A stretch of 64,000 nucleotides of DNA from the IMG/VR virus record IMGVR_UViG_3300023174_002543, positions 124,001 through 188,000 of that record; one strand, written 5' to 3'. A program made the position numbers and the translations under genes. Under the pieces are notes generated by a model that saw only the letters and a program-made list of their open reading frames with translations, was not told where the DNA came from and made no database searches. Within the stretch, counting starts at the first letter, position 1. Each line of letters opens with the position of its first letter. Below, in pieces: positions 36,684-50,022 of the stretch.

Positions 36684-36684
36684 T

Positions 36685-36780: not shown

Positions 36781-37203
36781 ATGACTAACTATAAAATATT
36801 TGAATATACCTATGATAAAGATAGTTTATTATCTTTGTATAATTCATTAAAAGATGAAGGTAAATCTAAAGTTGAGTTATGCTTTAATACAGCAGATTTA
36901 ACTGACGTACCGCATGATATCCTCCCTAATATGGATATCTATGAAAGAACATTGGCTATCGGAGAATATGGATTGGCAGAATTATTATCCGATACCGGAT
37001 ATCATGTTAATCCAGGCAATAATGGATTAATAATTTTCCCAGTGTCTGGTGTAATTAATTTTACATTTGAAGATGGAACTAGTATTGATATTACTCAACC
37101 TACATATACAAACGGTAAAGTAAGTCATACATACAGTCCAAAAGACGGTTCTGCTGTTTTCTTTGCTATTAAGATTCCATCTGATGTAGCATGGGAGGAT
37201 TAA
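36781..37203 (+). CDS. Hypothetical protein (degenerate cupin/2OG-like)
   Basis: GYHVN..NNGLIIFPV...HTY. Confidence 0.5.
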   Translation: MTNYKIFEYTYDKDSLLSLYNSLKDEGKSKVELCFNTADLTDVPHDILPNMDIYERTLAIGEYGLAELLSDTGYHVNPGNNGLIIFPVSGVINFTFEDGTSIDITQPTYTNGKVSHTYSPKDGSAVFFAIKIPSDVAWED

Positions 37204-37709: not shown

Positions 37710-38382
37710 CAATTACCTTTTTTACATTTGCTGTAGTAAAAGGTATATTAAGAATTAAATGGTGACTGTCGTTAACCCAACTAATGGTGCGATGTGTCAT
37801 ACGTGTGTTAACATAATATAGTTGACCTTGTTGTATATTCATCTTTTTGTCGTCCATTAACCAATCATATTGTAATGGGCCGCAATTGTTTAAAAATGCA
37901 ACTAGCCTAAAACATTCACGTGGCATACTTGGTGCATCACGGTGAGGAACAAAATATCCACCTATGTCACTACGTATAATCATAGAGCGACCAAGAGGTT
38001 GCCATTGTTCCAATACCGAATGTAAACTAGGACAACGATTATATACATCGGTTGGTGTGTTGAATTCTAATTCACTTAATTGACGACCGGCAGCATAACT
38101 TGCTTCGGCAAGGCTTGTATTTTCTTTGTGAGATTTACCGGGCAATGCCATTAATGTCATTGCTTTACGATTGTTGGGTCTATCTGTGCGAGGCAAATAA
38201 TTTACCCAATCATTGTCAAATTGACTAATCTCTTGCATATACTTGCCTGTGTCAATATACATGTTAAGTGGCTCAAAGTTACCTAAGTTAAGTAATGCTA
38301 ATTCATTAGCCATTATTTCGTGTGTAACATTAGTCGGGTCATATTCTTGGGGTCTGCCGCTGATTCCTGGTGGTACAAGCAT
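37687..38382 (-). CDS. Asp/Asn beta-hydroxylase-like 2OG-Fe(II) dioxygenase
   Basis: GGYFVPHRD, YYVNTRMTHRTISW...HLILN. Confidence 0.7.
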   Translation of the reverse strand: MLVPPGISGRPQEYDPTNVTHEIMANELALLNLGNFEPLNMYIDTGKYMQEISQFDNDWVNYLPRTDRPNNRKAMTLMALPGKSHKENTSLAEASYAAGRQLSELEFNTPTDVYNRCPSLHSVLEQWQPLGRSMIIRSDIGGYFVPHRDAPSMPRECFRLVAFLNNCGPLQYDWLMDDKKMNIQQGQLYYVNTRMTHRTISWVNDSHHLILNIPFTTANVKKVIASLAHTH

Positions 38383-38393
38383 TATAATGTTCT

Positions 38394-39050
38394 TTAAATA
38401 TAAGTTATCATTTGATCCATTGTAGGTCTTCTGTTCCTTGTATGGATATTTCTAATTGAAGAATCTAGATTTTTCAGGTCAAACCCAATTTCTATACCGT
38501 CTTTATAAACTTTAGAAATTGGATAATCACTGTGGTCACTGGTTGCGTAACCAAATCCAAGAGTGATGATAGCACTATGTTCTGGTTTGTTTAATCTGTC
38601 AGCAATTTCTCTGCCACCTATACAACCACAAAATCCAGTGCTAACACCTAATTCTTCGGCTTGACACATTGCCATAGTAGCACTAACTATGCAATCATTG
38701 TTAGTACGAAGGAATTCGTTTTCGGTATATGAATTCATTGGTTGATTGAATTGTTTGCCTAGCCAAATCATTACAATGGGTGCAGCCATTTGACCATTAT
38801 ATCTACGTAAACCAGGACCTTGCTTGGCTCTAATCATATCCAAGCAACTAGTATCTTCGTAGTATAACCATTGTTTAAACTCTTTGCCAGCAGGACTATC
38901 AGTAAGCACTATAATTTCATAGTCATAGTGACCTTGTTTGCTTGGTGCAAGATATGCACATTCAAGGATAGCATTAATTTTTTCGTTTTCTACAGTTTGG
39001 TCATTCCACCATTTTGCTGTATAACGGGTTCGCAAATAATCTAATAACAT
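38394..39050 (-). CDS. Nitroreductase-family protein
   Basis: RTRYTAKWW...ILECAYLAPSKQG; MCQAEELGVSTGFCG. Start moved to the ATG at 39050, 5 nt after TATAAATA. Confidence 0.8.
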   Translation of the reverse strand: MLLDYLRTRYTAKWWNDQTVENEKINAILECAYLAPSKQGHYDYEIIVLTDSPAGKEFKQWLYYEDTSCLDMIRAKQGPGLRRYNGQMAAPIVMIWLGKQFNQPMNSYTENEFLRTNNDCIVSATMAMCQAEELGVSTGFCGCIGGREIADRLNKPEHSAIITLGFGYATSDHSDYPISKVYKDGIEIGFDLKNLDSSIRNIHTRNRRPTMDQMITYI

Positions 39051-39091
39051 AGAAATATTTATACGTTTAAATGCCCATGAGAAACAATTAG

Positions 39092-39246
39092 TGTTGTTTT
39101 TTTGCAACAAACAGTTTGACAAGATATCCAACTTAGTATATAATTCATTTATGAATTGAGAAATTGATTCGCTGGGTGAATTGAAGAATTTGTTGTAATA
39201 ATACAACACAAAAAGATTTGACAATAAATCCAATTAGATGTATAAT
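39092..39246 (+). promoter_or_regulatory. Tandem duplicated sigma70 promoters, each preceded by TGTTG-N8-CAACA
   Basis: TTGACA 39116/TATAAT 39139 and TTGACA 39218/TATAAT 39241. Confidence 0.8.
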
Positions 39247-39296
39247 ACATTTAATGAGTTGAGAAATCAACATGTTCTTTAAAAAGTTAATTTTTC

Positions 39297-39559
39297 ATAT
39301 AGCCCTGTTTAAGTTACAGGGACTATATGCAAACACATTGGGTTACCTTCCCAGTAGGTAACTTAGATAGTGAGTAACCAGTTGACGGACTGGCACTTCT
39401 GAGTTACACGAAACCTTGAGACTATTAGTTATAGTAGTCAGGAGGACGCTGGAACAAGTTGGCACGTAATGTGGTTGACAAACAAGTCCGTGGACGGCAC
39501 GGTAGGGCAGGATCAAAACTGTTATTTTTGTCAAACACCCCAATGTCTTTTCATATAGT
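39297..39559 (+). ncRNA. Candidate multi-branch ncRNA closed by a clamp stem
   Basis: 18/20-bp stem 39322-39341/39540-39559; competing 5' hairpin 39297-39328; several inner hairpins. Confidence 0.6.
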
Positions 39560-39560
39560 G

Positions 39561-39689
39561 TGTTATTAGTTCTATCCTCTGTAAGCACAGAGGCAAACTA
39601 GATGCGTTATGTAACCTATCCGATAAACAGTAATCGGCCGTAAAGCTGTTGAGGGTAGGCAAATAGTGCAGTGGATAGAACTAATAATA
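39561..39689 (+). ncRNA. Candidate ncRNA with H-type pseudoknot
   Basis: Perfect 15-bp closing stem 39563-39577/39673-39687; CCGAT/ATCGG hairpin whose loop AACAG pairs with CTGTT. Confidence 0.6.
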
Positions 39690-39692
39690 TTT

Positions 39693-39769
39693 GCACCGTT
39701 AGCGCAGTTGGTTAGCGCACCGCCCTGTCACGGCGGGGGTCAGGGGTTCGAGTCCCCTACGGTGCGCCA
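39693..39769 (+). tRNA. tRNA-Asp(GTC)
   Basis: CCGCC-ctGTCac-GGCGG; CCA. Confidence 0.95.
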
Positions 39770-39776
39770 AGTTTTT

Positions 39777-39852
39777 GCTGGGTTCGTCTATCGGTTTAGG
39801 ACACATGCCTTTCACGTATGTAAGACGGGTTCGATTCCCGTACCCAGTACCA
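39777..39852 (+). tRNA. tRNA-Glu(TTC)
   Basis: CATGC-ctTTCac-GTATG; CCA. Confidence 0.93.
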
Positions 39853-39858
39853 AGTTTT

Positions 39859-39943
39859 GGAGATGTAGGAAAATTGGTAACCCCAGGAGACTGTAAATCT
39901 TCCGCCTCTGGCACTGTTGGTTCAACTCCAACCGTCTCCACCA
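39859..39943 (+). tRNA. tRNA-Tyr(GTA)
   Basis: AGA-ctGTAaa-TCT; long V-arm; CCA. Confidence 0.92.
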
Positions 39944-39964
39944 GAAACATGTTAGTAAAGAATT

Positions 39965-40825
39965 TGGGGGCATAGCCTCTTTAAGATAAGTCACGTGAGT
40001 GACCCAAAGCAGTATCCTCCTACAGGACTGCGCCAGTAATGGTCTATCTATGCAAGCCTGCTCTCACCCGCGAGGGTGCGTTCACTGATAAGACCGGTGG
40101 ATGTAACAGTAAAGCAAGTGTGTTGGAAAGAATGTCTGTTTATGTTCCCGTGAGGGTAAGACAGGCGGACAGAGAGTAACAGGTGGTGCTGACCTCAACA
40201 CAAAACCAACTTGTCAATTGGTAAGAGAAAGGGTAGTGTATTGATTCGAAGGGTCGCTCCTAAGAGTTCGTATGCAGTTTGAGTGTTTGATGGATATGTA
40301 GTAATACATATACATTGGTCGCAAAAAACTACTGATTACTCCGCGAGAGGAAAGGTACGTGGCGTGTTGTATTTTGTAGTCCAAAAGATTATGAAGCAAC
40401 TGAGACAGCACATCACAGTAGGTTGTTATAGGCTAATGGTAGGCCGATTTCCTTTTAAGAAATAGACTGTTGGTTCAACTCCAACTAACATTATAAAAAC
40501 GCAAAGTCTGTCTCGGTGGTATGTGAAAAACATCTAATACTTGAGTGGCAACACAATCAAGTCTGACGTAACTCGCAAGGTGAAATCAGTTTATGCAGGA
40601 AGTATCGTAACTACTTAGCGGTAGTGAATGGCTCTAAAGGTCAACGGTGTAGAAAGCGTAGAATAGCATATCATGTCAAGTCTAATGCCTGACTTAAAAC
40701 GGCGATGTTGGTAACAGACTAGGATATGTAGTAATACAGTCTTAGTGGAAATCAGAAGAAAGTAGGCTCGCAAGGCTTACAATAATGTCTGAGGTGTTAC
40801 TCGGTAAGCATGTATTCTCAGTGCT
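39965..40825 (+). ncRNA. Large ornate ncRNA, GOLLD-like (about 860 nt); boundaries approximate
   Basis: Long non-coding stretch inside the tRNA array with many GNRA-capped hairpins (ccc-GCGA-ggg, ccc-GTGA-ggg, gctc-GCAA-ggc, atatgta-GTAA-tacatat). Size and context match GOLLD; not tested against Rfam. Confidence 0.6.
40422..40493 (+). tRNA. CCA-less tRNA-Lys(TTT) embedded in the large ncRNA
   Basis: GGCT-aatggta-GGCC D-arm; ATTTC-ctTTTaa-GAAAT; GTTGG-ttcaact-CCAAC; weak acceptor; no CCA. Confidence 0.75.
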
Positions 40826-40829
40826 CCAC

Positions 40830-40930
40830 TTTATATAAAAACATACTGGACGCCACACAACGGCGGTCTAGCGTCAACTAGGCGATGTTACGTTTGACGA
40901 TGTAACAGATTTAGTGTGTTTCTATATAAA
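40830..40930 (+). ncRNA. Clamp element enclosing three hairpins (four-way junction)
   Basis: 17/18-bp stem 40830-40847/40913-40930; inner GACGCC/GGCGGTC, CTAG/CTAG, TGTTAC/GTAACA. Confidence 0.6.
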
Positions 40931-40934
40931 GGTT

Positions 40935-41147
40935 TTGTAAGTGTCAGCAAGAGAATGTCACGCTATAAAAGTTTCTTCGAAGGACTGATATAGTAAAAGG
41001 GGACGGGTTCAACTCCCGGTGGATCGGAAGATCCGCGCAGATTGGTTGCTAACTGGACTAGTATCCCAAGTGACGTACCGAGTCCTGGCCCGGGCTTTAT
41101 GCAAATCAGGTGAATGGTGTCAATAACGATGGTGGCACAACTTACAA
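40935..41147 (+). ncRNA. Candidate structured ncRNA (about 210 nt)
   Basis: Closing TTGTAAG-TGTC/GGCAC-aa-CTTACAA; T-loop-like GGG-TTCAACT-CCC; GGATC-ggaa-GATCC. Confidence 0.55.
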
Positions 41148-41156
41148 ATTTAATAT

Positions 41157-41244
41157 GGAGTATTGGCCGACCGGTTAAGGCAACGGATTGCTAATCCGTC
41201 GTTCAGAAATGGGCGAGTAGGTTCGATTCCTACATACTCCGCCA
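41157..41244 (+). tRNA. tRNA-Ser(GCT)
   Basis: ACGGA-ttGCTaa-TCCGT; long V-arm; CCA. Confidence 0.94.
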
Positions 41245-41266
41245 AAACGTTCCGTTGTCAACGGAT

Positions 41267-41504
41267 ACTCTGACCCAGAGGATGAGAAGTGATGTGACAA
41301 TCACGGGTGGTTCTGAAACGGAAAAGTTTCACACAGAAGCCATGATTGAACATGGATGTATGTGCGGTCTAACCAAACCGGCGTTAGCAATACGAGAACG
41401 GTCCCTGTCGGGAAGCGGGTGGAGGTCGTGCGTGATGTTGTCGTGGATTATTCGTCTAGTCCGATGATTGATGCGATATAATTACCGCCGAGGGATGTCA
41501 GAGC
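41267..41504 (+). ncRNA. Candidate structured ncRNA (about 240 nt)
   Basis: Closing CTCTGAC/GTCAGAG; inner GGTTCTG/CAGAAGCC, GAAAC/GTTTC, CGGT/ACCG, CGTT/AACG, TCCC/GGGA. Confidence 0.55.
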
Positions 41505-41512
41505 ATTTATAT

Positions 41513-41590
41513 GTAGGAGTGGCAGAGCGGCCCATTGCAACGGATTGCAAATCCGTAAAACCGTGAGTTCAAATCTCACCTCCTACTCCA
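41513..41590 (+). tRNA. tRNA-Cys(GCA)
   Basis: ACGGA-ttGCAaa-TCCGT; U73; CCA. Confidence 0.92.
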
Positions 41591-41609
41591 AATATTGAAA
41601 GGAAATGTA

Positions 41610-41990
41610 ATGTATTATGATTATGAATCGTCTGCTAAGTTAACAGACATGGTAGGTAAAGTGTTTACCTCAGTTAAAGAAACTGGTGATACTATGGTGT
41701 TTGAAAATGCAACTGACCGTTATGTTTTCTTTCACTCACAAGATTGTTGCGAATCAGTTAGCATCAATGATATAGTAGGTGATTTGTCTGACCTAGTAGG
41801 GGAACCTCTATTAGTGGCAGATGAAGTGTCTGGAGAAGCTCCGGTTGGATTTGAAGATGAATATCACGAATCAGTAACTTGGACATTTTACAAATTTGCT
41901 ACTCGCAAAGGGTATGTGGATGTACGATGGCTAGGTGAATCTAATGGGTACTATAGCGAAAGCGTAGACCTAGGTTACGAAAAAGTTTAA
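41610..41990 (+). CDS. Hypothetical protein
   Basis: GAAAGGA RBS; HSQDCCESV, WTFYKFAT.KG...RW.GESNGYYSE. Confidence 0.8.
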   Translation: MYYDYESSAKLTDMVGKVFTSVKETGDTMVFENATDRYVFFHSQDCCESVSINDIVGDLSDLVGEPLLVADEVSGEAPVGFEDEYHESVTWTFYKFATRKGYVDVRWLGESNGYYSESVDLGYEKV

Positions 41991-42004
41991 CAAAAGGAAA
42001 TGAC

Positions 42005-42061
42005 ATGAAACGAGGTAAGAAATAGTGTCATCATAGACTTCCGTAGGTCTATGATTGGCAC
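42005..42061 (+). other. Minigene MKRGKK-stop followed by a 14-bp hairpin
   Basis: AAAGGA RBS; ATG 42005; TAG 42023-42025; GTGTCA-TCATAGAC/GTCTATGA-t-TGGCAC. Confidence 0.45.
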
Positions 42062-42084
42062 GTAAAATCAATCATACGACTTAT

Positions 42085-42161
42085 GGAAGCATAACTCAAC
42101 TGGCTAGAGTATCGGACTTTTAATCCGAGAGTTGTGGGTTCGAGTCCCACTGCTTCTACCA
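42085..42161 (+). tRNA. tRNA-Lys(TTT)
   Basis: TCGGA-ctTTTaa-TCCGA; CCA. Confidence 0.94.
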
Positions 42162-42239
42162 TATAAGAACATACTGCCTTCTGGTGAGTAAGATAACAAT
42201 GCTTACAATAAAAGTCCAAGTAGTGTGTTCCTATATGGT
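42158..42239 (+). ncRNA. Clamp hairpin sequestering tRNA-Lys ACCA
   Basis: 17/18-bp ACCATATAAGAACATACT/AGTGTGTTCCTATATGGT. Confidence 0.65.
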
Positions 42240-42251
42240 ATAAATATTTTT

Positions 42252-42473
42252 ATGATAAATGAATTTAAATTTTTATTCACAAATAAAGAAGAATATCATC
42301 GTAGGTATGATATTTGCAAAAGTTGTGATAGGTTCAATAGCTTAACCAAGCAATGTAAAGAATGTAATTGCTTTATGCCAATGAAATGTAAGATAAGCAA
42401 TTTGCCCTGCCCCTTAGGCTATTGGGCTAATGCAATAGATGTATCTGAAACAGATAATTTAGAAACGTTATAA
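42252..42473 (+). CDS. Small Cys-rich metal-binding protein (DUF6171-like)
   Basis: R...CKSC......QCKECNCFM..K......CP...W; TATAAATA 5 nt upstream. Confidence 0.75.
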   Translation: MINEFKFLFTNKEEYHRRYDICKSCDRFNSLTKQCKECNCFMPMKCKISNLPCPLGYWANAIDVSETDNLETL

Positions 42474-42475
42474 AA

Positions 42476-42549
42476 GTCTCCTTGGTGTAACGGCAGCATG
42501 ATGGTCTCCAAAACCATTCGTGGGGGTTCAAATCCCTCAGGGGACGCCA
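42476..42549 (+). tRNA. tRNA-Trp(CCA)
   Basis: ATGGT-ctCCAaa-ACCAT; CCA. Confidence 0.93.
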
Positions 42550-42551
42550 AA

Positions 42552-42752
42552 TTATTTTCTAAACTCAAGTTCCTTGAGTTTTTTGATTACTAAATCAAAA
42601 GTATGTGAATCATTTAATGATAGACTAGCAATTAGGGCAAGAAGGATACCCTGTTCATACAACAGTTGTTGTTCTCTTGTATTAAAATTCTTTTTATTAG
42701 AAATATATACAAGATGTTCTCGCAGGCGTTCTGCTATTTTTAATGGATCCAT
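42552..42752 (-). CDS. Small antisense hypothetical protein within the tRNA array
   Basis: Minus-strand TATAAATA 4 nt upstream of the ATG. Confidence 0.65.
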   Translation of the reverse strand: MDPLKIAERLREHLVYISNKKNFNTREQQLLYEQGILLALIASLSLNDSHTFDLVIKKLKELEFRK

Positions 42753-42765
42753 ATATTATTTATAA

Positions 42766-42842
42766 GCCTCAATAGCTCATTTGGTTAGAGCACCGTCTTG
42801 ATAAGGCGGGGGTGCCTAGTTCGAATCTAGGTTGAGGCACCA
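42766..42842 (+). tRNA. tRNA-Ile(GAT)
   Basis: CCGTC-ttGATaa-GGCGG; CCA. Confidence 0.94.
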
Positions 42843-42848
42843 GAATAT

Positions 42849-42877
42849 TTGACAAGTACTAACTAGTGCTATATAAT
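42849..42877 (+). promoter_or_regulatory. Sigma70 promoter
   Basis: TTGACA-17-TATAAT. Confidence 0.8.
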
Positions 42878-42888
42878 AGAGACATGTT

Positions 42889-42965
<77 letters not shown>

Positions 42966-42982
42966 CCTAATAAGAAAGTATC

Positions 42983-43399
42983 ATGGATTTAACAAAAGAA
43001 GACGGCGACAAACGCAATAGTTTACCTTATCCAATGGAGTTAGGTAGTCCTGCATTTGCACCCATCGATGTTAAAAAAGAAAGTGATGTGTTATACAATG
43101 CTGGCAAATTACATGCCAAGCAAGAGTATGATAGAATCATGGAACAAGTAGAAGTTCTAAGACGCCAAGCAGAAAGTTTGGAGCATAGAATGCAAGTAAG
43201 TGACATGATGCATAATATTACTATTACCTTTAAGCCGGTGCATGGTAAGATTTATTATGTGTATTTGGATACACTTAAAAATAAACACTGGCTTTCACTG
43301 AACCATCCTAATAGTTGGTCAGCACTAGGTATACATCATAAATTTGTAGTTGCTGTCCAACTAATGGGTGATAGTAATTGGCAAAAAGTAGAAATTTAA
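42983..43399 (+). CDS. DUF2452-like hypothetical protein
   Basis: PYP.ELGSPAF; coiled coil AKQEYDRI.EQ; FKPVHGKIYYVY. Confidence 0.7.
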   Translation: MDLTKEDGDKRNSLPYPMELGSPAFAPIDVKKESDVLYNAGKLHAKQEYDRIMEQVEVLRRQAESLEHRMQVSDMMHNITITFKPVHGKIYYVYLDTLKNKHWLSLNHPNSWSALGIHHKFVVAVQLMGDSNWQKVEI

Positions 43400-43400
43400 T

Positions 43401-43474
43401 GCGGGGTTAGTTTAATGGTAAAACAGCAGATTTCCAATCTTCGGTCGAGAGTTCGATTCTCTCACTCCGCTCCA
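43401..43474 (+). tRNA. tRNA-Gly(TCC)
   Basis: Loop ttTCCaa; U73; CCA. Confidence 0.9.
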
Positions 43475-43670
43475 ATCAATAGGAATATTATTTATGAATA
43501 TGAAAATTACATACGACAATCCTGATAACTTACAAGAAGACAGTACTCCTATACCGGAGGACGCTAAAAAAGGTCTTGCAATTCCATTTCATGTTCAGAT
43601 TGGACTACAAGAATCAATACCGGTATCAATAAGTACTACTCAAGTTCCAATAGAACCAAGTGAGAAATAG

Positions 43671-43910
43671 TTGACAGACTACATAACAACATTTTTTGCA
43701 ATCTTTTTACTTGATATTGTTTACACATACTACTTAAGATGTGTGGCAAATGATAACGTGTTAGGTGCAAGTTTTTGGAGTGTAGCCTGTTATATCTTAG
43801 GAAGTGTGGCAGTTATAAATTACACAACCAATCATTGGTTAATGATTCCAGCAATGGCTGGTGCGTTTTGTGGCACCTTTATTGGAATGAAGATTAGAAA
43901 GAAAGATTGA
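43671..43910 (+). CDS. Small membrane protein
   Basis: Three hydrophobic segments; TTG start. Confidence 0.65.
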   Translation: MTDYITTFFAIFLLDIVYTYYLRCVANDNVLGASFWSVACYILGSVAVINYTTNHWLMIPAMAGAFCGTFIGMKIRKKD

Positions 43911-43912
43911 TT

Positions 43913-43996
43913 GCCCCGGTGGTGGAATGGTAGACACGTTGGTCTTAGAAGCCAATGTCGAAAGGCGTGCGAGTTCGAGTCTCGCCTGGGGCACCA
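43913..43996 (+). tRNA. tRNA-Leu(TAG)
   Basis: TTGGT-ctTAGaa-GCCAA; long V-arm; CCA. Confidence 0.94.
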
Positions 43997-44000
43997 AATT

Positions 44001-44084
44001 GCGAGAGTGGTGGAATGGTATACACAGCAGACTTAAAATCTGCCGCCGAAGGGCTTACGGGTTCGAGTCCCGTCTCTCGTACCA
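44001..44084 (+). tRNA. tRNA-Leu(TAA)
   Basis: GCAGA-ctTAAaa-TCTGC; long V-arm; CCA. Confidence 0.94.
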
Positions 44085-44189
44085 TTATAGAGTACAGGCT
44101 CTTTATAAATCCTGTCTTTGCGTGGAACCGAGCAACGCTACTGCTTGTATAAGCATCGGTTCATATTACTACTATAGATAAATAGTAGT

Positions 44190-44366
44190 ATGAAATTCAA
44201 TATATTCATCAATAATAAACTATATAAAACAGTTACCGTTCAGGGCGACACTTTTAATCCTACTTCAATTTGGCCTCAAATTGAAGCCGATAAAAAATCC
44301 GGACTATTAAGTAGTTACAATGTCAGCGAACAACTGTCTATCAAAGTAGAAAAAGTCAAAAATTAA
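44190..44366 (+). CDS. Small hypothetical protein, 58 aa (not in ORF track)
   Basis: TAAATA 5 nt upstream; MKFNIFINNKLYKTV. Confidence 0.55.
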   Translation: MKFNIFINNKLYKTVTVQGDTFNPTSIWPQIEADKKSGLLSSYNVSEQLSIKVEKVKN

Positions 44367-44369
44367 TCT

Positions 44370-44444
44370 ACATGATTAACTCAGTGGTAGAGTCCTGTCC
44401 TGACTCGACAGTGGTCAATAGTTCGAATCTATTATCATGTACCA
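44370..44444 (+). tRNA. tRNA-Val(GAC) with unusual U37
   Basis: CTGTC-ctGACtc-GACAG; ACATGAT/ATCATGT; CCA. Confidence 0.85.
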
Positions 44445-44494
44445 AAACACTTGCAAGTATTTTAAATCAGTGCTATACTTGCGTATAAATATTT

Positions 44495-44569
44495 CGTGGG
44501 GTGGAGAAGTAGTATCTCACTAGTCTCATAAGCTAGAGAACGGCGGTGCGATTCCGTCCCCCGCAACCA
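44495..44569 (+). tRNA. Initiator-like tRNA-Met(CAT)
   Basis: C1.A72 mismatch; loop ctCATaa; lacks the three G-C anticodon-stem pairs; CCA. Confidence 0.75.
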
Positions 44570-44587
44570 AACAACTAAAGGAAAATA

Positions 44588-44857
44588 ATGAAAGTAAGAG
44601 CAAGACATATTTTAGTACCGACGCTTAATGAAGCAGTTGAAGTCTTTAACAAGATTAAAGAAGGTGAAGATTTTGGTGCTGTAGCACGTAAAATGTCAAA
44701 GTGTCCTAGTGGTCAAAATGGTGGCGACTTGGGTGAGTTTGGTCACGGTCAAATGGTTAAGCCTTTTGAAGATGCCTCATTCGGGTTAGAGGTAGGTCAA
44801 CTGAGCGAACCTGTTCAAACACAGTTCGGTTATCATTTAATTCAACGTACAGGATAA
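44588..44857 (+). CDS. ppiC: Parvulin-type peptidyl-prolyl cis-trans isomerase
   Basis: ARHILV, SKCPSGQNGGDLGEF..GQMVKPFEDA, PVQTQFGYHLI. Confidence 0.95.
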   Translation: MKVRARHILVPTLNEAVEVFNKIKEGEDFGAVARKMSKCPSGQNGGDLGEFGHGQMVKPFEDASFGLEVGQLSEPVQTQFGYHLIQRTG

Positions 44858-44859
44858 TT

Positions 44860-45021
44860 ATGACTTGTAGGGGATATGATTCTAAAACCGTTAAAATCGG
44901 CAAAGATGTGAAACGTGCCGCGGCATTAATTCATGACCAACATAAACGCGGTGAGTTCATTCGCAGTTTTGTAAAAATTGCACAGAGTGAATCACGTACT
45001 GGTCGTAAAGACAGCAAGTAA
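44860..45021 (+). CDS. Small basic hypothetical protein, 53 aa (not in ORF track)
   Basis: MTCRGYDSKTVKIGKDVKRAAALI...; coupled to ppiC. Confidence 0.6.
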   Translation: MTCRGYDSKTVKIGKDVKRAAALIHDQHKRGEFIRSFVKIAQSESRTGRKDSK

Positions 45022-45041
45022 TATTTCTTAGAAAGATTATC

Positions 45042-45226
45042 ATGCAAATTAGAGTTAAAGAAAATGTAGAAGACTTTGGCAAATGCGGTTGCGGTCGTAG
45101 TCCAATTGGTAAATGCATTGGCTGGCATTAGGATTAACTGAAGAAGCATTTCGTCATGCACAAATGCTTTGGATGGAAGAAGAATTACGTAAAGATGCAG
45201 AAATTGAAAATCTAAACAAAGAATAA
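45042..45226 (+). pseudogene. Frameshifted CDGSH-like Fe-S/Zn finger gene
   Basis: CGCGRSP.GKCIGWH then TAG at 45129; a plausible continuation GLTEEAF...NKE lies in another frame to 45226. Confidence 0.55.
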
Positions 45227-45227
45227 C

Positions 45228-45303
45228 GCATCCTTAACTCAGTTGGTAGAGTGTCGCCTTTACACGGCGAATGTCGGCGGTTCGAGCCCGTCAGGATGTA
45301 CCA
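45228..45303 (+). tRNA. tRNA-Val(TAC)
   Basis: TCGCC-ttTACac-GGCGA; CCA. Confidence 0.94.
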
Positions 45304-45318
45304 GAATAAATACACATT

Positions 45319-45504
45319 ATGAACAACGAAAATCAAAATAAATTATCTGACGAAGTTATCACATGCGTTACCTTTCTAGTTGACGATAGTGATAATGATA
45401 GTGTACAATCTGAATCTACACTAGTAGGACTTGATACTAAGCGCAAGCCTACTAATGTTAGTCAACCCGGTAAACATGTAAATGTCATCAGTGAAAAAGT
45501 TTAA
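45319..45504 (+). CDS. Hypothetical protein
   Basis: 61-aa ORF between tRNAs. Confidence 0.5.
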   Translation: MNNENQNKLSDEVITCVTFLVDDSDNDSVQSESTLVGLDTKRKPTNVSQPGKHVNVISEKV

Positions 45505-45505
45505 T

Positions 45506-45579
45506 GCGGGATTAGTTTAATGGTCAAACGAAACCTTGCCAAGGTTTAGTCAGGAGTTCGATTCTCCTATCCCGCTCCA
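45506..45579 (+). tRNA. tRNA-Gly(GCC)
   Basis: AAACC-ttGCCaa-GGTTT; CCA. Confidence 0.94.
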
Positions 45580-45599
45580 AATAACAACGAAAGAAAATT

Positions 45600-45848
45600 A
45601 TGCCAAGACAATGTAGTGAAGCCGCAGTACAATCAGTAGGTAATCGTTATGACTTAGTTCTTATTGCAAGTGCAAGAGTAAGAGAACTAGTAAGAGGTGA
45701 TATGCCTAAGTTAACAACAACGGCTAAACCCAGTGTTACTGCATTACTTGAAATTGAAAATGGTTTAGTTGGACGTGAGTATCTTAAGAAAATTAAAGAT
45801 GAACCACGCAAAGAACGTAAGTACGACAAGTACGATAGTAGATATTAA
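45600..45848 (+). CDS. rpoZ: RNA polymerase omega subunit homolog
   Basis: VGNRYDLVLIASARVREL..G..P......KPSVTALLEIE.GLVG matches the RpoZ pattern. Confidence 0.85.
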   Translation: MPRQCSEAAVQSVGNRYDLVLIASARVRELVRGDMPKLTTTAKPSVTALLEIENGLVGREYLKKIKDEPRKERKYDKYDSRY

Positions 45849-45854
45849 AAATTT

Positions 45855-45930
45855 GGGGGTGTAGCTCACCAGGGAGAGCGGTTCCTTTGCAAGGAATAGG
45901 TAGCGGGTTCGAGTCCTGTCACCTCCACCA
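45855..45930 (+). tRNA. tRNA-Ala(TGC), second copy
   Basis: G3.U70; GTTCC-ttTGCaa-GGAAT; CCA. Confidence 0.93.
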
Positions 45931-45936
45931 AGATAA

Positions 45937-46028
45937 GGAAGCGTGGCCGAGCCCGGTTTAAGGTACCTGACTTGAAATCAGACGAGGGGGCAACCTCTCC
46001 GTGAGTTCGAATCTCACCGCTTCCGCCA
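45937..46028 (+). tRNA. tRNA-Ser(TGA), canonical 7/5
   Basis: CTGA-ctTGAaa-TCAG; long V-arm; CCA. Confidence 0.93.
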
Positions 46029-46032
46029 AGTA

Positions 46033-46069
46033 ATGGTCATAGTATTAATTTACTATGACCATTTTTTTT
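46033..46069 (+). terminator. Intrinsic terminator ending the tRNA array
   Basis: ATGGTCATAGTA/TACTATGACCAT followed by T7. Confidence 0.9.
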
Positions 46070-46143
46070 GTCCCTATTACCTTGACAATAACATAATTGG
46101 GTTTTTGACATTGACCTAACTATGTAGATAAATATTATAATGG

Positions 46144-46305
46144 TTTTATAAGTGTTCTATATTGCACCCTGCTGATAAGACAGGCCCTGTTTGTGAAAAA
46201 GATATTAGAATACTTATAAAAACACCCTAGCCAAACATTGCAAACATTTGAGTTTACATACTCCTAGTTCTTTAATACTTTTTAGCGCATCTAGGGTGTT
46301 TTTAT
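46144..46305 (+). ncRNA. Two overlapping, mutually exclusive long stems
   Basis: 16 bp 46144-46159/46206-46221 and perfect 15 bp 46216-46230/46291-46305 share ATAAAA; TAAATA at 46129. Confidence 0.5.
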
Positions 46306-46311
46306 TTGCGC

Positions 46312-46340
46312 TTGACAATAATTCCCAAATCACGTATAAT
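46312..46340 (+). promoter_or_regulatory. Sigma70 early promoter
   Basis: TTGACA-17-TATAAT. Confidence 0.85.
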
Positions 46341-46362
46341 ACTCACAATGAAGGAGAATAGT

Positions 46363-46857
46363 ATGCCATGGATTCAAAACGTAGCACTTAGTGATATCAA
46401 AAAAGGGTTTCATATTGACCCCGGACCCAACAACCTGTTGATTCAGATTGTTGATACAGGTATGGAATTTCCTGAACCAAAATATAAATTCAATAGTGTG
46501 CATCAATTTCAATTTTTAGATTTGGAAAAGAATGATTTGTGCATTGAACCAGAAATGAAAATCAGTGACGACCAAGCAAATAGTTTGGTAATACTACTAA
46601 AGCAAGCATTGCTTAATCGTAGTAATGTAATTGTGCATTGTGTTGCAGGTGTGTGTCGTAGCGGTGCAGTATGCGAAGTTGGTGTAATGATGGGTTTTGA
46701 TGACACAGAAGTTTTTCGTAGCCCTAACTTGTTAGTGAAACACAAAATGATGAAAGTGTTGGGTTTAACTTATGATGAGAATGAACCTCATACTATCAAT
46801 GGTATAACATTAGATTCTGGGCTAATTGTGCCTAAGAATTATGAAGGTGATATATGA
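46363..46857 (+). CDS. Protein tyrosine/dual-specificity phosphatase-like protein
   Basis: VHCVAGVCRSGA (CX5R); AAGGAG RBS before the ATG at 46363. Confidence 0.85.
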   Translation: MPWIQNVALSDIKKGFHIDPGPNNLLIQIVDTGMEFPEPKYKFNSVHQFQFLDLEKNDLCIEPEMKISDDQANSLVILLKQALLNRSNVIVHCVAGVCRSGAVCEVGVMMGFDDTEVFRSPNLLVKHKMMKVLGLTYDENEPHTINGITLDSGLIVPKNYEGDI

Positions 46858-47171
46858 AAGTATTGCGTAAGTTAGTACGTGATGGGCATGTTGCAATACT
46901 AATCAGTTCTGATTATGGTAGTGGTTGGTATAGTTGGAATCCTGACTATCCTGAAATACTTTTTGATCCGGCAATGATTAGACTTGTAGAGGAAAATAAA
47001 TTTGATGAATTAGAAATTTATGTTACACTGAAGTATCCAGAAATACATAAACATGCATTACGTGATTTAGAAGTTGAGTGGGTACGTGAGGGTGCAGAGT
47101 TTCGCATTAAAGAACATGATGGTGCTGAAACTATTGAATTTAAAGATGAAGTAGATTGGATTGTAGCATGA
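46854..47171 (+). CDS. Hypothetical protein
   Basis: SSDYGSGWYSWN; FRIKEHDGAE. Confidence 0.75.
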   Translation: MKVLRKLVRDGHVAILISSDYGSGWYSWNPDYPEILFDPAMIRLVEENKFDELEIYVTLKYPEIHKHALRDLEVEWVREGAEFRIKEHDGAETIEFKDEVDWIVA

Positions 47172-47401
47172 CATATATTGTAGAACACAACGAATTTGAA
47201 AAAGAATTCGTATCACTTGACATGGCAATGGACTATGCTAAGACATTAGATGTGTTTGTTGTCATTAAAGGTGACGATGGGTTAGAGATTGCAGGTAAGT
47301 TTGGTGTTGATAGCGTTGAGAACGGCAAAACACCCGATGGCATTGCATATACATGGAATAAAGAAAGTCGTATTGGTCGAGTACAGAAGGAGCGGTCATG
47401 A
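47168..47401 (+). CDS. Hypothetical protein
   Basis: ATGA-coupled ORF. Confidence 0.7.
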   Translation: MTYIVEHNEFEKEFVSLDMAMDYAKTLDVFVVIKGDDGLEIAGKFGVDSVENGKTPDGIAYTWNKESRIGRVQKERS

Positions 47402-47871
47402 ACAAGTGTTATCAGTTAATAGGTGTGCCTGGTGCAGGTAAAAGTACTTGGTATAAAAATCAAGACTGGCTAGGCAAGGATAAAAAGGATCACAAGTATG
47501 TTTCTACTGACCAGCATGTTGAAGGATATGCTCAGGATCAAGGTAAGACCTACCGTGAAGTCTTTGAAGAATACATGCCTATTGCTATTAAGCAAATGAT
47601 GGTCAATGTTAACATGGCTTCGGCAATGCGATTGGACATTGTTTGGGATCAAACTAGTACTACATTAAAAAGTCGTACTCGCAAGTTTAATGCTTTACCG
47701 GACTATGACCATGTTGCTGTTGTATTTTCTACGCCCGATTTAAAAGAATTAAAACGTAGATTAAACAGTCGTCCAGGTAAAGTTATTCCTTGGGAAGTAG
47801 TACAGGGTATGATTGACAATTGGGAAGAGCCTACCCTTGAAGAAGGCTTTAAAGAAATTTGGAGAGTATAA
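47398..47871 (+). CDS. P-loop kinase, polynucleotide kinase-like (AAA_33)
   Basis: LIGVPGAGKSTW, VSTD, VWDQT, R...R. Confidence 0.85.
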   Translation: MNKCYQLIGVPGAGKSTWYKNQDWLGKDKKDHKYVSTDQHVEGYAQDQGKTYREVFEEYMPIAIKQMMVNVNMASAMRLDIVWDQTSTTLKSRTRKFNALPDYDHVAVVFSTPDLKELKRRLNSRPGKVIPWEVVQGMIDNWEEPTLEEGFKEIWRV

Positions 47872-48452
47872 TGCCATCAGTATTTTTAGTTAGTGATACT
47901 CACTTTGGACATTTAGGTGTATGTAAATTTACACGTAACGATGGGGTGACAAAGTTACGCCCATGGACTGATCCAGATGAAATGGATGAAGAAATGGTAA
48001 AGCGTTGGAACGAACGTGTGAAGCCTAGTGATAAAGTATATCACTTAGGTGATGTAGTCATCAACCGCAAAGCATTAAAGATTATGCACCGCTTAAATGG
48101 TGACAAAGTTTTAATTCGTGGTAACCATGATATTTTCCGTGACACTGAATACCGTGAACACTTCCGTGAATTACGTGCTTATCATGTTATGAATGGAATG
48201 ATATTAAGTCATATACCTATACACGAAGAAAGTTTAGGTAGATTTGGTGTTAACATTCATGGTCACCTACATGCCAATCGTGTAATGACAAGTAAGCATA
48301 AAGGTTCTACTCCTATAGTGGATGTTAGGTATCATTGCGTATGCGTAGAACAAACAGACTTTGCACCTATACTCTTTGAAGATGTTATCAAACGCATTGA
48401 AGAGGAAGGTGGTTCAATTGGGTTTAAGAGTGGTAATGGACCTACTATGTAG
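47871..48452 (+). CDS. Calcineurin-like metallophosphoesterase
   Basis: SDTHFGH, YHLGDV, RGNHD, LSHIP, IHGHLH. Confidence 0.92.
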   Translation: MPSVFLVSDTHFGHLGVCKFTRNDGVTKLRPWTDPDEMDEEMVKRWNERVKPSDKVYHLGDVVINRKALKIMHRLNGDKVLIRGNHDIFRDTEYREHFRELRAYHVMNGMILSHIPIHEESLGRFGVNIHGHLHANRVMTSKHKGSTPIVDVRYHCVCVEQTDFAPILFEDVIKRIEEEGGSIGFKSGNGPTM

Positions 48453-48752: not shown

Positions 48753-49523
48753 ATGACTAAGTTTTTAATAACTCTATTATTCTTACCACTAAGTGTGTTT
48801 GCACACACAAATTCGGTAGTATATAACATAACAAATAACCAAATTGTTTCAGGATCATTAGATAGTAGTGAGGTGTCTATTGCTAGTATTAGTAAATTGA
48901 TGACCGTATATACTGTACTGAAACAAGAACAAGACCTTGACGAACGTTTAACAGTGGACAATACAAAAACTCCTACTACAAGATTGAATAAAGGAATGAA
49001 ACTAACTAGATTAGAACTAATTAATTTAGCACTAATATCTAGCGATAATAAGGCAGCAATTACATTATCACAAAATTTTCCCGGTGGTCAACCTCATTTC
49101 ATTCGTACAATGAATCAAAATACTAGAGAATTGGGAATGAAACACACTGGTTTTGTAGAACCAACTGGATTAAGTCCCATGAACTATTCAAGTATAGAGG
49201 ATATAGTCAAACTTACCCAAGCTGTAAGTCAGTTTGATTTAGTACAAGAAGCCGCCAGGTCAACTAAATCAGTAGCATTGCCCGCTAAGACTAAAAAGGG
49301 TAAGAAACCTGTAAAGGTCAGTGGCAGACCAACAAGTCACTATTTTGGTAAAGATGGTATAATTACAATCAAAACGGGTTTTACTAATGCCGCAGGATTT
49401 TGTATTACTATGCTTGTGCAAGCAAATGACCAATTATATAATATAACGGTCCTAGGGGCAAAATCTAAACAAGAACGTGAACGTATTATTAAGAAATCTT
49501 TGGATAAAATTTACAACGCATAA
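48753..49523 (+). CDS. D-Ala-D-Ala carboxypeptidase/endopeptidase (peptidase S11, PbpG/DacC-like) with signal peptide
   Basis: ASISKLMT (SxxK), SSDN (SxN), FVEPTGLS, IKTGFT..AG.C. Confidence 0.92.
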   Translation: MTKFLITLLFLPLSVFAHTNSVVYNITNNQIVSGSLDSSEVSIASISKLMTVYTVLKQEQDLDERLTVDNTKTPTTRLNKGMKLTRLELINLALISSDNKAAITLSQNFPGGQPHFIRTMNQNTRELGMKHTGFVEPTGLSPMNYSSIEDIVKLTQAVSQFDLVQEAARSTKSVALPAKTKKGKKPVKVSGRPTSHYFGKDGIITIKTGFTNAAGFCITMLVQANDQLYNITVLGAKSKQERERIIKKSLDKIYNA

Positions 49524-49560
49524 AATACTCATATTATAATTGTGGCATAAATAGCATTAT

Positions 49561-50022
49561 ATGCTAACATTTATCAAAGAAATCGGAAACGCCTTATTAG
49601 ACTTTATCAAAGATGATCCTGTACGTCCTGAGATCCCAACTGATTTTCGTGTTACTAACGGTAGAATGGTGGCAGCACTAGTAGATGAAGAACAGCCCGA
49701 AGCTATGGTATGTGTTAGTTTTCACGACTTTGTTCCAGAAGATGTTAAAGATTTAAACACTACCGCAGTTGTACCTACTACCGCAGTATTCTATACTATT
49801 TGGAGTTATAAAGCAGGTAAGGGTAAAGAGTTACTTATTCAAGCAGTAAGAGAAATACAAAAGACTCATCCAAGCGTAACTCGTTTTGTAACATTAAGTC
49901 CTAAGACTGAAGTGGCAAGACGATTCCATCTACGTAATGGTGCTATCGTTTTCCGTGAAAACATAGACACTACTAATTACGAATATATCAAACCAACTGA
50001 AGTACTTGACACAACTAAATAG
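49561..50022 (+). CDS. Hypothetical protein (GNAT-like fold possible)
   Basis: DDPVRP, FYTIWSY..GKGKEL, TLSP.T..A..FHL.NGA. Confidence 0.7.
   Translation: MLTFIKEIGNALLDFIKDDPVRPEIPTDFRVTNGRMVAALVDEEQPEAMVCVSFHDFVPEDVKDLNTTAVVPTTAVFYTIWSYKAGKGKELLIQAVREIQKTHPSVTRFVTLSPKTEVARRFHLRNGAIVFRENIDTTNYEYIKPTEVLDTTK

What the first reader, a model, noticed from the sequence alone, without database searches (positions are those of the whole stretch)
45600..45848. Phage RNAP omega subunit with an altered ppGpp-site N-terminus, inside the tRNA array
Seen: RpoZ-like core, but the N-terminus is MPRQCSEAA versus E. coli MARVTVQDA. Established: omega N-terminal residues (A2, R3, D8) help form ppGpp site 1, and ppGpp represses stable-RNA promoters. 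Inference: swapping in this omega could make host RNAP less sensitive to the stringent response and keep the tRNA/ncRNA hub transcribed in starved hosts.
Basis: partly seen in the sequence, partly recalled or inferred. Interest (0 to 1): 0.65.

Follow-up and report, generated by a model that had tools for sequence, protein, structure and literature searches.

The report
Phage-encoded RNA polymerase omega subunit
A 367-kb freshwater jumbo phage carries its own well-conserved copy of omega, the smallest subunit of bacterial RNA polymerase, inside its tRNA operon; it belongs to a large virus-only omega clade that the papers I searched do not mention, so the phage probably alters the host's transcription enzyme from within, though the proposed ppGpp mechanism is only weakly supported.

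Summary
Window 45600-45848 (+) is an intact 82-aa ORF. It passes the curated rpoZ/Rpb6 cut-offs and folds like E. coli and Vibrio omega. It starts MPRQCSEAA and lies between tRNA-Gly and tRNA-Ala in a 33-tRNA array.

The genome is a T4-like jumbo myovirus from lake metagenomes. I found no beta, beta', sigma70, DksA or RelA/SpoT homolog in it, but it has 27 perfect sigma70 promoters, so it depends on host RNAP.

The gene is not an isolated capture. More than 120 distinct relatives (55-98% identity) form one clade, separate from sampled cellular omegas (at most 47% identity). They sit on large viral contigs, often directly after a tRNA, and never next to gmk. dN/dS is about 0.17.

Only 24 of 120 family members keep the proteobacterial MAR start, against 33 of 33 cellular omegas compared. 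This gives family-level support for an altered N-terminus.

R3 is retained and the published omega contacts to ppGpp are largely main-chain. [quoted passage not shown] The phage promoters also have A/T-rich discriminators.

Most likely this is a functional replacement omega that retunes host RNAP. Binding to beta' is untested.

The parts
45600..45848 (+). Phage omega (rpoZ-like) gene, 82 aa, stop codon included. N-terminus MPRQCSEAA, helical omega core at about residues 7-67, basic C-terminal tail at residues 63-82 (net charge +4).
   Evidence: ORF. Pfam and NCBIfam scores above cut-off. PDB omegas. AF2 model and Foldseek hits. dN/dS 0.17 against L002. Charge.
45589..45593 (+). Shine-Dalgarno-like GAAAG, 6 nt before the ATG, within the 20-nt spacer after tRNA-Gly.
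   Evidence: Sequence. The layout 'tRNA 3' end with encoded CCA, about 20 nt, AAGGA/GAAAG, ATG' recurs in many related loci.
45506..45579 (+). tRNA-Gly(GCC) directly upstream of omega, with CCA encoded.
   Evidence: ARAGORN. Rfam tRNA 65.5 bits. The same ...CCCGCTCCA end precedes omega in L002, L004-L007, L011, L015 and L019.
45855..45930 (+). tRNA-Ala(TGC), starting 6 nt after the omega stop codon.
45937..46028 (+). tRNA-Ser(TGA), the last gene of the array.
46032..46070 (+). Intrinsic terminator: 13-bp stem, 6-nt loop and a T run. It closes the tRNA/omega transcription unit.
   Evidence: strongest terminator-like site in 30500-47000. Sequence.
42849..42877 (+). Nearest upstream perfect sigma70 promoter (TTGACA-17-TATAAT) with discriminator AGAGACA. 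It is the likely start of the unit that runs through tRNA-Met ... PPIase ... tRNA-Gly, omega, tRNA-Ala, tRNA-Ser.
   Evidence: It is one of 27 perfect sites in the genome, against about 0.2 expected. Use of this promoter is inferred, because no RNA data exist.
46363..46857 (+). Conserved neighbour of omega: a Cys-type dual-specificity-phosphatase-like gene with its own perfect promoter (46312-46340) and an AAGGAG ribosome-binding site.
   Evidence: Pfam DSPc/PTP-SAK matches below cut-off. A homolog is present in 41 of 82 omega-bearing loci. Start site reasoned and from the homolog in L116.

Best explanation
What it is. The gene encodes a functional, phage-specific version of the omega subunit of bacterial RNA polymerase.

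How it most likely works:
1. Host sigma70-RNAP transcribes it early, as part of a tRNA operon, from a consensus promoter.
2. RNase P and 3'-end processing of the flanking tRNAs probably release the small mRNA.
3. The protein takes the omega position on the host beta' subunit, in place of or in addition to host omega.
4. The phage has no RNAP of its own but has 27 consensus sigma70 promoters, 33 tRNAs and genes up to 24 kb long. The benefit is therefore a host core enzyme that stays assembled, favours the primary sigma factor, and has a changed ppGpp site 1.
5. The changed site 1 comes from the divergent N-terminus (P2, Q4, S6, A8 in place of A2, V/I4, V6, D8).
6. If ppGpp sensing is changed, the expected effect is on elongation and pausing under high ppGpp, not on promoter-level stringent control.

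Shown here:
- omega family membership and fold
- a virus-only clade under purifying selection
- the conserved tRNA-linked context
- no other RNAP subunit, sigma70 (region 2), DksA/TraR or RelA/SpoT homolog detected
- the density of consensus promoters

Inferred:
- binding to host beta'
- exchange with host omega
- any effect on sigma choice or ppGpp response
- the identity of the host (probably a freshwater member of Pseudomonadota)
For: Family and fold.

Real phage. Portal, baseplate and virion protein families were found. The portal is 48-54% identical to those of Sinorhizobium phage Phosso, Agrobacterium Atu_ph07, Pseudomonas PA5oct and E. coli 121Q. The record is 367,104 bp and CheckV rates it 100% complete.

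Dependence on host RNAP. No Rpb1_2, Rpb2_6 or Sigma70_r2 domain was found. There are 27 perfect TTGACA-N17-TATAAT sites against about 0.2 expected.

Selection and spread:
- 250 word-search relatives and 127 IMG/VR relatives.
- Ten invariant and 18 nearly invariant columns in 94 sequences.
- dN/dS 0.17 against L002, and 0.14-0.44 against more distant relatives, where synonymous sites are near saturation.
- 120 distinct family members split from 33 cellular omegas on one branch with SH-aLRT support of 99.
- The best cellular identity is 47% among 401 sampled Pseudomonadota genomes.
- Only phage-like contigs gave close hits in a pattern scan of GTDB species genomes.

Viral context:
- gmk is absent from all 82 omega loci, but present in 30 of 30 cellular loci.
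- A tRNA lies within 500 bp in 34 of 81 loci.
- The tRNA-SD-ATG junction is conserved.
- Portal homologs occur in 4 of 5 large omega-bearing contigs.

Assembly integrity.

Literature. Omega helps beta' folding and assembly (PMC5811629 abstract). [quoted passage not shown] Its N-terminal residues contact ppGpp at site 1, which controls elongation (PMC10191844 and PMC13192712).
Against: - There is no direct evidence of binding to any beta'. The complex prediction with E. coli beta' residues 500-1407 gave no answer.
- There are no RNA data.
- The host is unknown, so compatibility with its beta' is assumed from about 40-47% identity to proteobacterial omegas.
- Whether omega can exchange into pre-assembled host RNAP during infection is not established.
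- Omega is dispensable in the model bacteria studied, so the size of any benefit is uncertain.
- Two phage-type omega contigs were binned with a Bacteroidota MAG whose own omega is unrelated in sequence. If that reflects a true host, simple replacement of host omega would be less plausible for those phages.
Confidence: 0.6

Rival explanations
1. Phage omega replaces host omega, destroys ppGpp site 1 and so relieves stringent (promoter-level) repression, keeping the tRNA/ncRNA operons transcribed in starved hosts.
For: The N-terminal segment that touches ppGpp is the part that departs from the cellular pattern. The MAR start is kept in only 24 of 120 family members against 33 of 33 cellular omegas, and D8 and V6 are lost. 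Three related omega loci carry a small SpoT-HD-like hydrolase gene 2-4 kb away, and the genome has two MazG genes. These are weak hints that this phage group deals with alarmones.
Against: - R3 is retained and the contacts are main-chain.
[quoted passage not shown] - The phage promoters have consensus hexamers, 17-bp spacers and A/T-rich discriminators. From established knowledge, these are not features of ppGpp-inhibited promoters.
- No DksA/TraR mimic is present in the genome.
Confidence: 0.12
2. Maintenance only. The phage omega is functionally equivalent to host omega and simply tops up a labile or limiting subunit during a long infection. It would then resemble phage-borne tRNAs, chaperones and ribosomal proteins, with no change in regulation.
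For: The gene sits in a module of host-machinery helpers: 33 tRNAs, a parvulin PPIase, a DnaJ-domain protein and RNA-end phosphatase/kinase-like genes. The core omega residues are conserved.
Against: The family is a long-branched clade with its own fixed substitutions at positions that are otherwise constant in cellular omegas (S6, V27, E29, R59, Y61). A simple spare copy would be expected to resemble the host's omega, and to be re-acquired repeatedly rather than form one old viral clade. PMC7676912 reports that omega levels change little with growth conditions in E. coli.
Confidence: 0.18
3. Not an RNAP subunit in practice. The omega fold has been re-used as a decoy or adaptor that binds something else, for example a phage protein, a host defence sensor or nucleic acid through its basic surface and tail.
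For: All family members are basic (pI 9.35-10.9) and most carry a basic C-terminal tail. The gene is conserved next to phosphatase and phosphoesterase genes of unknown target. The complex prediction gave no support for binding, which is no evidence either way.
Against: Short cellular omegas are equally basic. The residues invariant in the family (R16, D18, L21, A23, R26, R28, G33, E51) are also constant or nearly so in the cellular omegas compared, as expected if the beta'-binding core is preserved.
Confidence: 0.07
4. A decaying or accidental piece of host DNA with no function.
For: Small ORFs between phage tRNAs are often fillers or mobile elements.
Against: The frame is intact in over 100 distinct relatives. 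dN/dS is 0.17, there are ten invariant columns, the ribosome-binding site and tRNA junction are conserved, and the gene is present in independent studies.
Confidence: 0.03

Closest known systems
Proteobacterial RNAP omega subunit (RpoZ: E. coli, Vibrio cholerae, and the short 66-67-aa type that I recall as betaproteobacterial)
   Same: Same Pfam and TIGR family and the same helical fold. About 40-47% identity over residues 3-72. R3 and the NR[FY]DL, RxR, G33 and ALxEI motifs are shared. Like the short cellular type, it lacks the 2-residue loop insertion and is basic.
   Different: It is encoded by a virus, not in the gmk-rpoZ-spoT context. The N-terminus is MPRQCSEAA rather than MAR[VI]T[VI][EQ]D. 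The clade has its own fixed residues (S6, V27, E29, R59, Y61) and a 20-residue basic tail. It forms a separate clade with 99% support.
Phage proteins that modify or bind host RNAP (T4 AsiA, gp33/gp55, Alt/ModA; T7 Gp2; Xp10 P7)
   Same: The likely purpose is the same: redirecting the host enzyme in a phage that has no polymerase of its own. This rests on established knowledge. RNAP structures with phage P7, gp45 and gp79 appear among the Foldseek hits only because they contain host omega.
   Different: Those are phage-invented binders or enzymes acting on alpha, beta, beta' or sigma. Here the phage carries a homolog of a core subunit itself. I found no report of that in the library searched.
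Virus-encoded components of host expression machinery (phage tRNAs, sigma factors, ribosomal proteins, translation factors of huge phages)
   Same: A small host-machine part is carried by a large phage, next to tRNAs. Al-Shayeb et al. 2020 list many translation and some transcription genes in huge phages.
   Different: Omega is not mentioned there, nor in the 224-genome jumbo-phage comparison or the 2026 jumbo-phage review.
Phage small alarmone hydrolases (the 'HD-alarmone PDEase' of group 2/3 jumbo phages)
   Same: They are another possible route by which large phages could deal with (p)ppGpp (PMC7824862). A SpoT-HD-like gene lies near omega in 3 related loci.
   Different: They are enzymes that destroy the signal, not an RNAP subunit. 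None is found in this genome.

Membership tests
Bacterial RNAP omega subunit (RpoZ / Rpb6 superfamily) | Sequence match to the curated family models above their cut-offs | tested here: met
   PF01192 42 bits (cut-off 26). TIGR00690 32.9 bits (cut-off 23.6).
Bacterial RNAP omega subunit (RpoZ / Rpb6 superfamily) | Omega fold (small helical domain) | tested here: met
   AF2 pLDDT 84.4, with helices at 7-13, 16-32, 44-53 and 60-67. The listed Foldseek PDB hits are omega chains or entries containing omega, with TM 0.66 by query and 0.74-0.78 by target for E. coli and Vibrio.
Bacterial RNAP omega subunit (RpoZ / Rpb6 superfamily) | Binds beta' and is part of the core enzyme | tested here: inconclusive
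   Complex prediction with RPOC_ECOLI 500-1407 returned 'no answer' (score 0.00, controls not run). This needs biochemistry with the true host's RNAP.
Cellular proteobacterial rpoZ orthologs | Chromosomal gmk-rpoZ-spoT neighbourhood | tested here: not met
   30 of 30 (gmk) and 28 of 30 (spoT) cellular loci have it. 0 of 82 viral omega loci have gmk. The window gene lies between tRNAs.
ppGpp site-1-competent omega (proteobacterial 'MAR motif' omegas) | N-terminal M-A-R followed by the [VI]-T-[VI]-[EQ]-D segment (omega residues 2-5 contact the ppGpp phosphates) | tested here: not met
   The window protein has M-P-R-Q-C-S-E-A, so only R3 and E7 match. 33 of 33 cellular omegas compared have the full pattern, while only 24 of 120 family members start MAR. 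Contact residues come from PMC7676912, PMC10191844 and PMC13192712. Because the contacts are main-chain, failing the motif does not prove loss of binding.
ppGpp site-1-competent omega (proteobacterial 'MAR motif' omegas) | Partner beta' carries R362, R417, K615, I619, D622 and Q623 equivalents | not testable with these tools
   The host is unknown, and the taxonomy of the genome handles is hidden.
Phage multisubunit RNAP (phiKZ/AR9 type) | Phage-encoded beta/beta'-like subunits that an omega could serve | tested here: not met
   No Rpb1_2 or Rpb2_6 match in the complete genome. Very divergent homologs could escape these models.

The most novel reading that the evidence does not exclude
A widespread, virus-only clade of omega subunits lets large T4-like phages swap out a core subunit of the host RNA polymerase. 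This would rebuild the ppGpp site-1 pocket so that elongation on very long phage genes and tRNA operons is no longer slowed by the host alarmone. It would be the first case of a phage replacing a core RNAP subunit rather than binding or modifying one.
Probability: 0.25. Interest if true: 0.8.

Novelty: new variant of a known kind. Interest (0 to 1): 0.6.

Why it matters
Phages are known to redirect host RNA polymerase with binders, covalent modifiers and sigma factors, or to bring their own polymerase. A phage-borne homolog of a core subunit would be a further strategy. I found no description of it in about 8.4 million searchable papers, nor in the main jumbo-phage comparative studies.

The family offers natural variants of the omega N-terminus: MPR, MAR and extended forms. 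This is the segment that forms part of ppGpp site 1, whose physiological role is still debated, between initiation and elongation or repair. Testing these variants on a model RNAP would bear on both phage takeover and site-1 function.

The tight and recurrent tRNA-omega linkage also raises the question of why small protein genes are embedded in phage tRNA operons.

Tried and rejected
1. Complex prediction. Complex prediction of phage omega with E. coli beta' residues 500-1407 scored 0.00 and gave 'no answer'. It is not evidence either way. The truncated beta' lacks the N-terminal part of the omega site, which may have doomed the attempt.

2. PHROGs. There was no family for the omega.

3. Isolated phages. 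tblastn against 50,697 records gave 8 hits. The two I inspected (H9, H15) are bacterial DNA with gmk-rpoZ-spoT, and the other six share the same ~41-44% identity and are probably the same kind of contaminant. I therefore found no credible omega in an isolated phage at E <= 1e-3.

4. Host identification.
   - The GTDB pattern scan found only phage-like contigs as close hits.
   - The 401-genome sample returned no taxon names. Calling the nearest cellular type betaproteobacterial rests on my recollection of 67-aa Burkholderiales omegas.
   - The tree does not resolve a sister group.
   - The 'careful' tree search did not finish, so the quick IQ-TREE result was used.

5. Bacteroidota host hint. 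Two phage-type omega contigs are binned in a Haliscomenobacter MAG. That MAG's own omega (114 aa, next to coaBC) gave no tblastn hit to the phage omega. I treat the binning as unproven.

6. RNA evidence. No RNA run holds the region.

7. The D8-ppGpp contact. It was not found in the papers available, and Mechold 2013 and Zuo 2013 were not retrievable.

8. Other searches.
   - The large representative protein search was not run. It carries no names or context, so it could not separate viral from cellular relatives.
   - The word search sees only proteins of about 45-143 aa, so omega fusions would have been missed.

9. Labelling caveat. The label 'phage family' for the 120 word-search proteins rests on context checks of the 80 IMG/VR loci and 2 MAG contigs, not on a check of every protein.

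Full report
**1. The observation**

Window 45600-45848 (+) is an 82-aa ORF with an ATG start. It scores above the curated cut-offs of Pfam RNA_pol_Rpb6 (42 bits against 26) and NCBIfam TIGR00690 rpoZ (32.9 against 23.6). Its best matches among solved structures are the omega subunits of Vibrio cholerae and E. coli RNAP (E 1e-9 to 1e-8, residues 3-72).

An AlphaFold2 model built on 94 relatives has pLDDT 84.4. Its top Foldseek matches in the PDB are omega chains, with TM up to 0.78 by target.

An upstream start is impossible because tRNA-Gly(GCC) ends 20 nt before the ATG.

The gene sits in an array of 33 tRNA genes, all on the + strand (31234-46028). tRNA-Ala begins 6 nt after its stop codon.

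Contigs from other lake and freshwater runs, covering at least three studies, span the tRNA-omega-tRNA junctions. Two of them show no differences. The arrangement is therefore not an assembly artefact.

**2. What genome this is**

The window is bases 124001-188000 of a 367,104-bp IMG/VR virus record that CheckV rates as complete. The genome encodes a T4-type portal, a baseplate hub and virion proteins.

The portal is 48-54% identical to those of Sinorhizobium phage Phosso, Agrobacterium phage Atu_ph07, Pseudomonas phage PA5oct and E. coli phage 121Q. These are distant T4-like jumbo myoviruses of Proteobacteria.

The DNA occurs almost identically in freshwater and lake metagenomes of at least two studies.

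I found no beta' (Rpb1_2), beta (Rpb2_6), sigma70 region 2, DksA/TraR, RelA/SpoT or SpoT-type HD domain in the genome. It does have two MazG genes. Omega is thus the only cellular-RNAP component detected.

The genome carries 27 perfect TTGACA-N17-TATAAT sites, where about 0.2 are expected. This is the signature of a phage that uses the host's sigma70 holoenzyme. It also argues for a host with canonical sigma70 promoters.

**3. Transcription unit**

The nearest perfect promoter upstream is at 42849-42877. The strongest terminator-like site in the region (13-bp stem plus T run, 46032-46070) follows tRNA-Ser directly.

Omega therefore appears to be co-transcribed with tRNAs and other small ORFs, including a parvulin PPIase at 44588-44857. 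A GAAAG motif lies 6 nt before the ATG.

In many relatives the same layout recurs: a tRNA 3' end with encoded CCA, about 20 nt, AAGGA or GAAAG, then ATG. There are no RNA data, so expression and processing are inferred.

**4. A virus-only omega clade**

The word search returned 250 relatives, many at 55-98% identity. Several of the 'long' versions begin with translated tRNA 3' ends.

The IMG/VR scan found 127 relatives, of which 80 loci were fetched. Of 81 omega-bearing loci scanned (these 80 plus the window's own), 34 have a tRNA within 500 bp of omega. Many have 13-29 tRNAs within 10 kb.

Four of five large omega-bearing contigs (86-316 kb) also carry a homolog of this phage's portal, at 75, 66, 49 and 31% identity.

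The cellular neighbour gmk is found in 30 of 30 cellular omega loci and in none of the 82 viral loci.

In 50,697 records of isolated phages, the only hits are mislabelled bacterial contigs with gmk-rpoZ-spoT.

In a pattern scan of one genome per GTDB species, the only close hit lies on a tRNA-rich, phage-like contig (28 tRNAs in 20 kb) binned into a Haliscomenobacter MAG. A follow-up search of that MAG found a second phage-type omega on another such contig (19 tRNAs in 20 kb). The MAG's own omega is of the unrelated Bacteroidota type.

Among 401 evenly sampled Pseudomonadota genomes, the best identity is 47%.

In a quick maximum-likelihood tree, the 120 distinct family proteins separate from 33 cellular omegas on one branch with SH-aLRT support of 99. 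The sister group is not resolved.

Purifying selection is evident:
- dN/dS is 0.17 against the closest locus.
- Ten columns are invariant across 94 sequences.

**5. The N-terminus**

All 33 cellular Pseudomonadota omegas I extracted begin MAR[VI]T[VI][EQ]D.

In the viral family the pattern is as follows:
- R3 is kept in 112 of 120 members.
- Position 2 is P (56), A (38) or V (17).
- Position 6 is S (117) instead of V/I.
- Position 8 is K/A/E/G instead of D.
- By architecture, 55 start MPRx, 24 start MARx, 32 have a 3-5-residue extension before R[VAI]Rx, and 9 are otherwise different.

So the segment that is constant in cellular omegas is re-modelled and variable in the viral clade.

Other clade-specific fixed residues (V27, E29, R59, Y61) lie in the core. 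The whole family is basic (pI 9.35-10.9), like the short 66-67-aa cellular omegas and unlike the acidic gammaproteobacterial ones. Most members carry a basic tail.

**6. What the literature says about that segment**

- Site-1 phosphates are coordinated by omega residues 2-5 and by beta' R417 and K615 (PMC7676912).
- In high-resolution structures, the contacts are main-chain groups of Ala2, Arg3 and Val4 (PMC10191844), or Ala2 and Arg3 (PMC13192712).
- I could not verify a D8 contact.
- PMC10191844 reports that site 1 is dispensable for the stringent response and for rRNA promoter inhibition in E. coli. It instead controls elongation, backtracking and transcription-coupled repair. DksA-dependent site 2 carries the promoter effect.
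- The discriminators of the phage's perfect promoters are A/T-rich: AGAGACA, TCATTTA, ACATTTA and ACTCACA. From established knowledge of ppGpp/DksA-regulated promoters, negatively regulated ones have GC-rich discriminators and short-lived open complexes.

An altered site 1 remains plausible, but its predicted effect would be on elongation.

**7. Most likely function**

I conclude that this is a functional phage omega that occupies the omega site on host beta' and retunes the host enzyme on which the phage wholly depends.

[quoted passage not shown] Both would favour a phage with 27 consensus sigma70 promoters.

The re-modelled N-terminus may additionally change ppGpp site 1. This could matter for transcribing very long genes; the genome has ORFs of 8,153 and 5,727 codons.

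Binding to beta', exchange with resident omega, and any regulatory effect are inferences. The single complex prediction gave no answer.

Rivals, with my weights:
- a plain spare part, 0.18
- a re-purposed omega fold that binds something else, 0.07
- a functionless remnant, 0.03

**8. Novelty**

I found no mention of a phage-encoded omega in full-text searches. The same holds for the 224-genome jumbo-phage comparison (PMC7824862), the huge-phage survey (PMC7162821), the 2026 jumbo-phage review (PMC13282480) and the review of jumbo-phage RNAPs, where omega appears only in a reference title.

Automatic pipelines already label many of these proteins 'RNA polymerase omega subunit'. The annotation therefore exists, but the viral clade, its tRNA linkage and its N-terminal divergence appear undescribed. 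I rate it a new variant of a known kind.

**9. Limits**

- The host is unknown and taxon names for the sampled genomes were hidden.
- The cellular comparison set is 33 sequences, drawn mostly from the best hits of a 401-genome sample.
- The tree rests on 78 columns.
- The viral label for all 120 proteins is extrapolated from the loci I could inspect.
- No alternative genetic code was used.

Noticed in passing
window 40359-40824 (+): A full-length GOLLD RNA (Rfam RF02032, 201 bits against a gathering score of 150, model positions 1-416) lies inside the tRNA array. tRNA-Lys (40422-40493) is embedded in it.
   Followed up: partly
window 2-14410 (+), which is G000:C1:113949-138410; also G000:C1:21233-38416 (-): Two giant open reading frames of 8,153 and 5,727 codons. 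The first runs into the start of the window. They were not annotated here.
   Followed up: no
window 46363-46857, 47398-47871 and 47859-48452 (+): A Cys-type dual-specificity-phosphatase-like gene, an AAA_33 P-loop kinase-like gene and a calcineurin-like phosphoesterase lie just downstream of omega. The phosphatase-like gene and the phosphoesterase recur in 41 and 42 of 82 omega-bearing loci. Together they look like an RNA-end healing (Pnkp-like) set beside the tRNAs, but the target is unknown.
   Followed up: partly
whole genome; in the window at 39116, 39218, 42849 and 46312 (+): There are 27 perfect TTGACA-N17-TATAAT promoters, against about 0.2 expected. Those examined all have A/T-rich discriminators. 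This is a very uniform early-promoter class.
   Followed up: partly
L019:8885-9286, L038:3651-4016, L055:8382-8645: Three related omega-bearing viral loci encode a small protein matching SpoT residues 18-153, the (p)ppGpp hydrolase HD domain with an HDVVEDT motif. It lies 2-4 kb downstream of omega. It is absent from this genome.
   Followed up: partly
window 32644-32735 (+); also L121:10278-10369: ARAGORN calls a 92-nt 'tRNA-Ile(TAT)' with its anticodon at position 31. The Rfam tRNA model does not report it at gathering score. A 92-nt call of the same kind is found in a related phage contig. It may be an intron-containing or otherwise atypical tRNA.
   Followed up: no
window 44588-44857 (+) and 34133-34723 (-): A parvulin-type PPIase (E 2e-22) and a DnaJ-domain protein (E 7e-18) are interleaved with the tRNAs. 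The PPIase is conserved in six related loci.
   Followed up: partly
G002 contigs C1 (183 kb; L120) and C90 (23 kb; L121): A GTDB species genome labelled Haliscomenobacter sp. (a MAG) contains two contigs with 19 and 28 tRNAs per 20 kb, each with a phage-type omega. They are probably jumbo-phage contigs binned with the bacterium. This is either contamination or a hint about the host.
   Followed up: partly
G000:C1:305988-306200 (-) and 201025-201252 (-): Two MazG-family pyrophosphohydrolase genes lie elsewhere in the genome.
   Followed up: no
window 14898-18551 (+) and 48753-50022 (+): Class I ribonucleotide reductase large and small subunits, a D-Ala-D-Ala carboxypeptidase (Peptidase_S11) and a protein with a malonyl-CoA-decarboxylase-like segment.
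   Followed up: no
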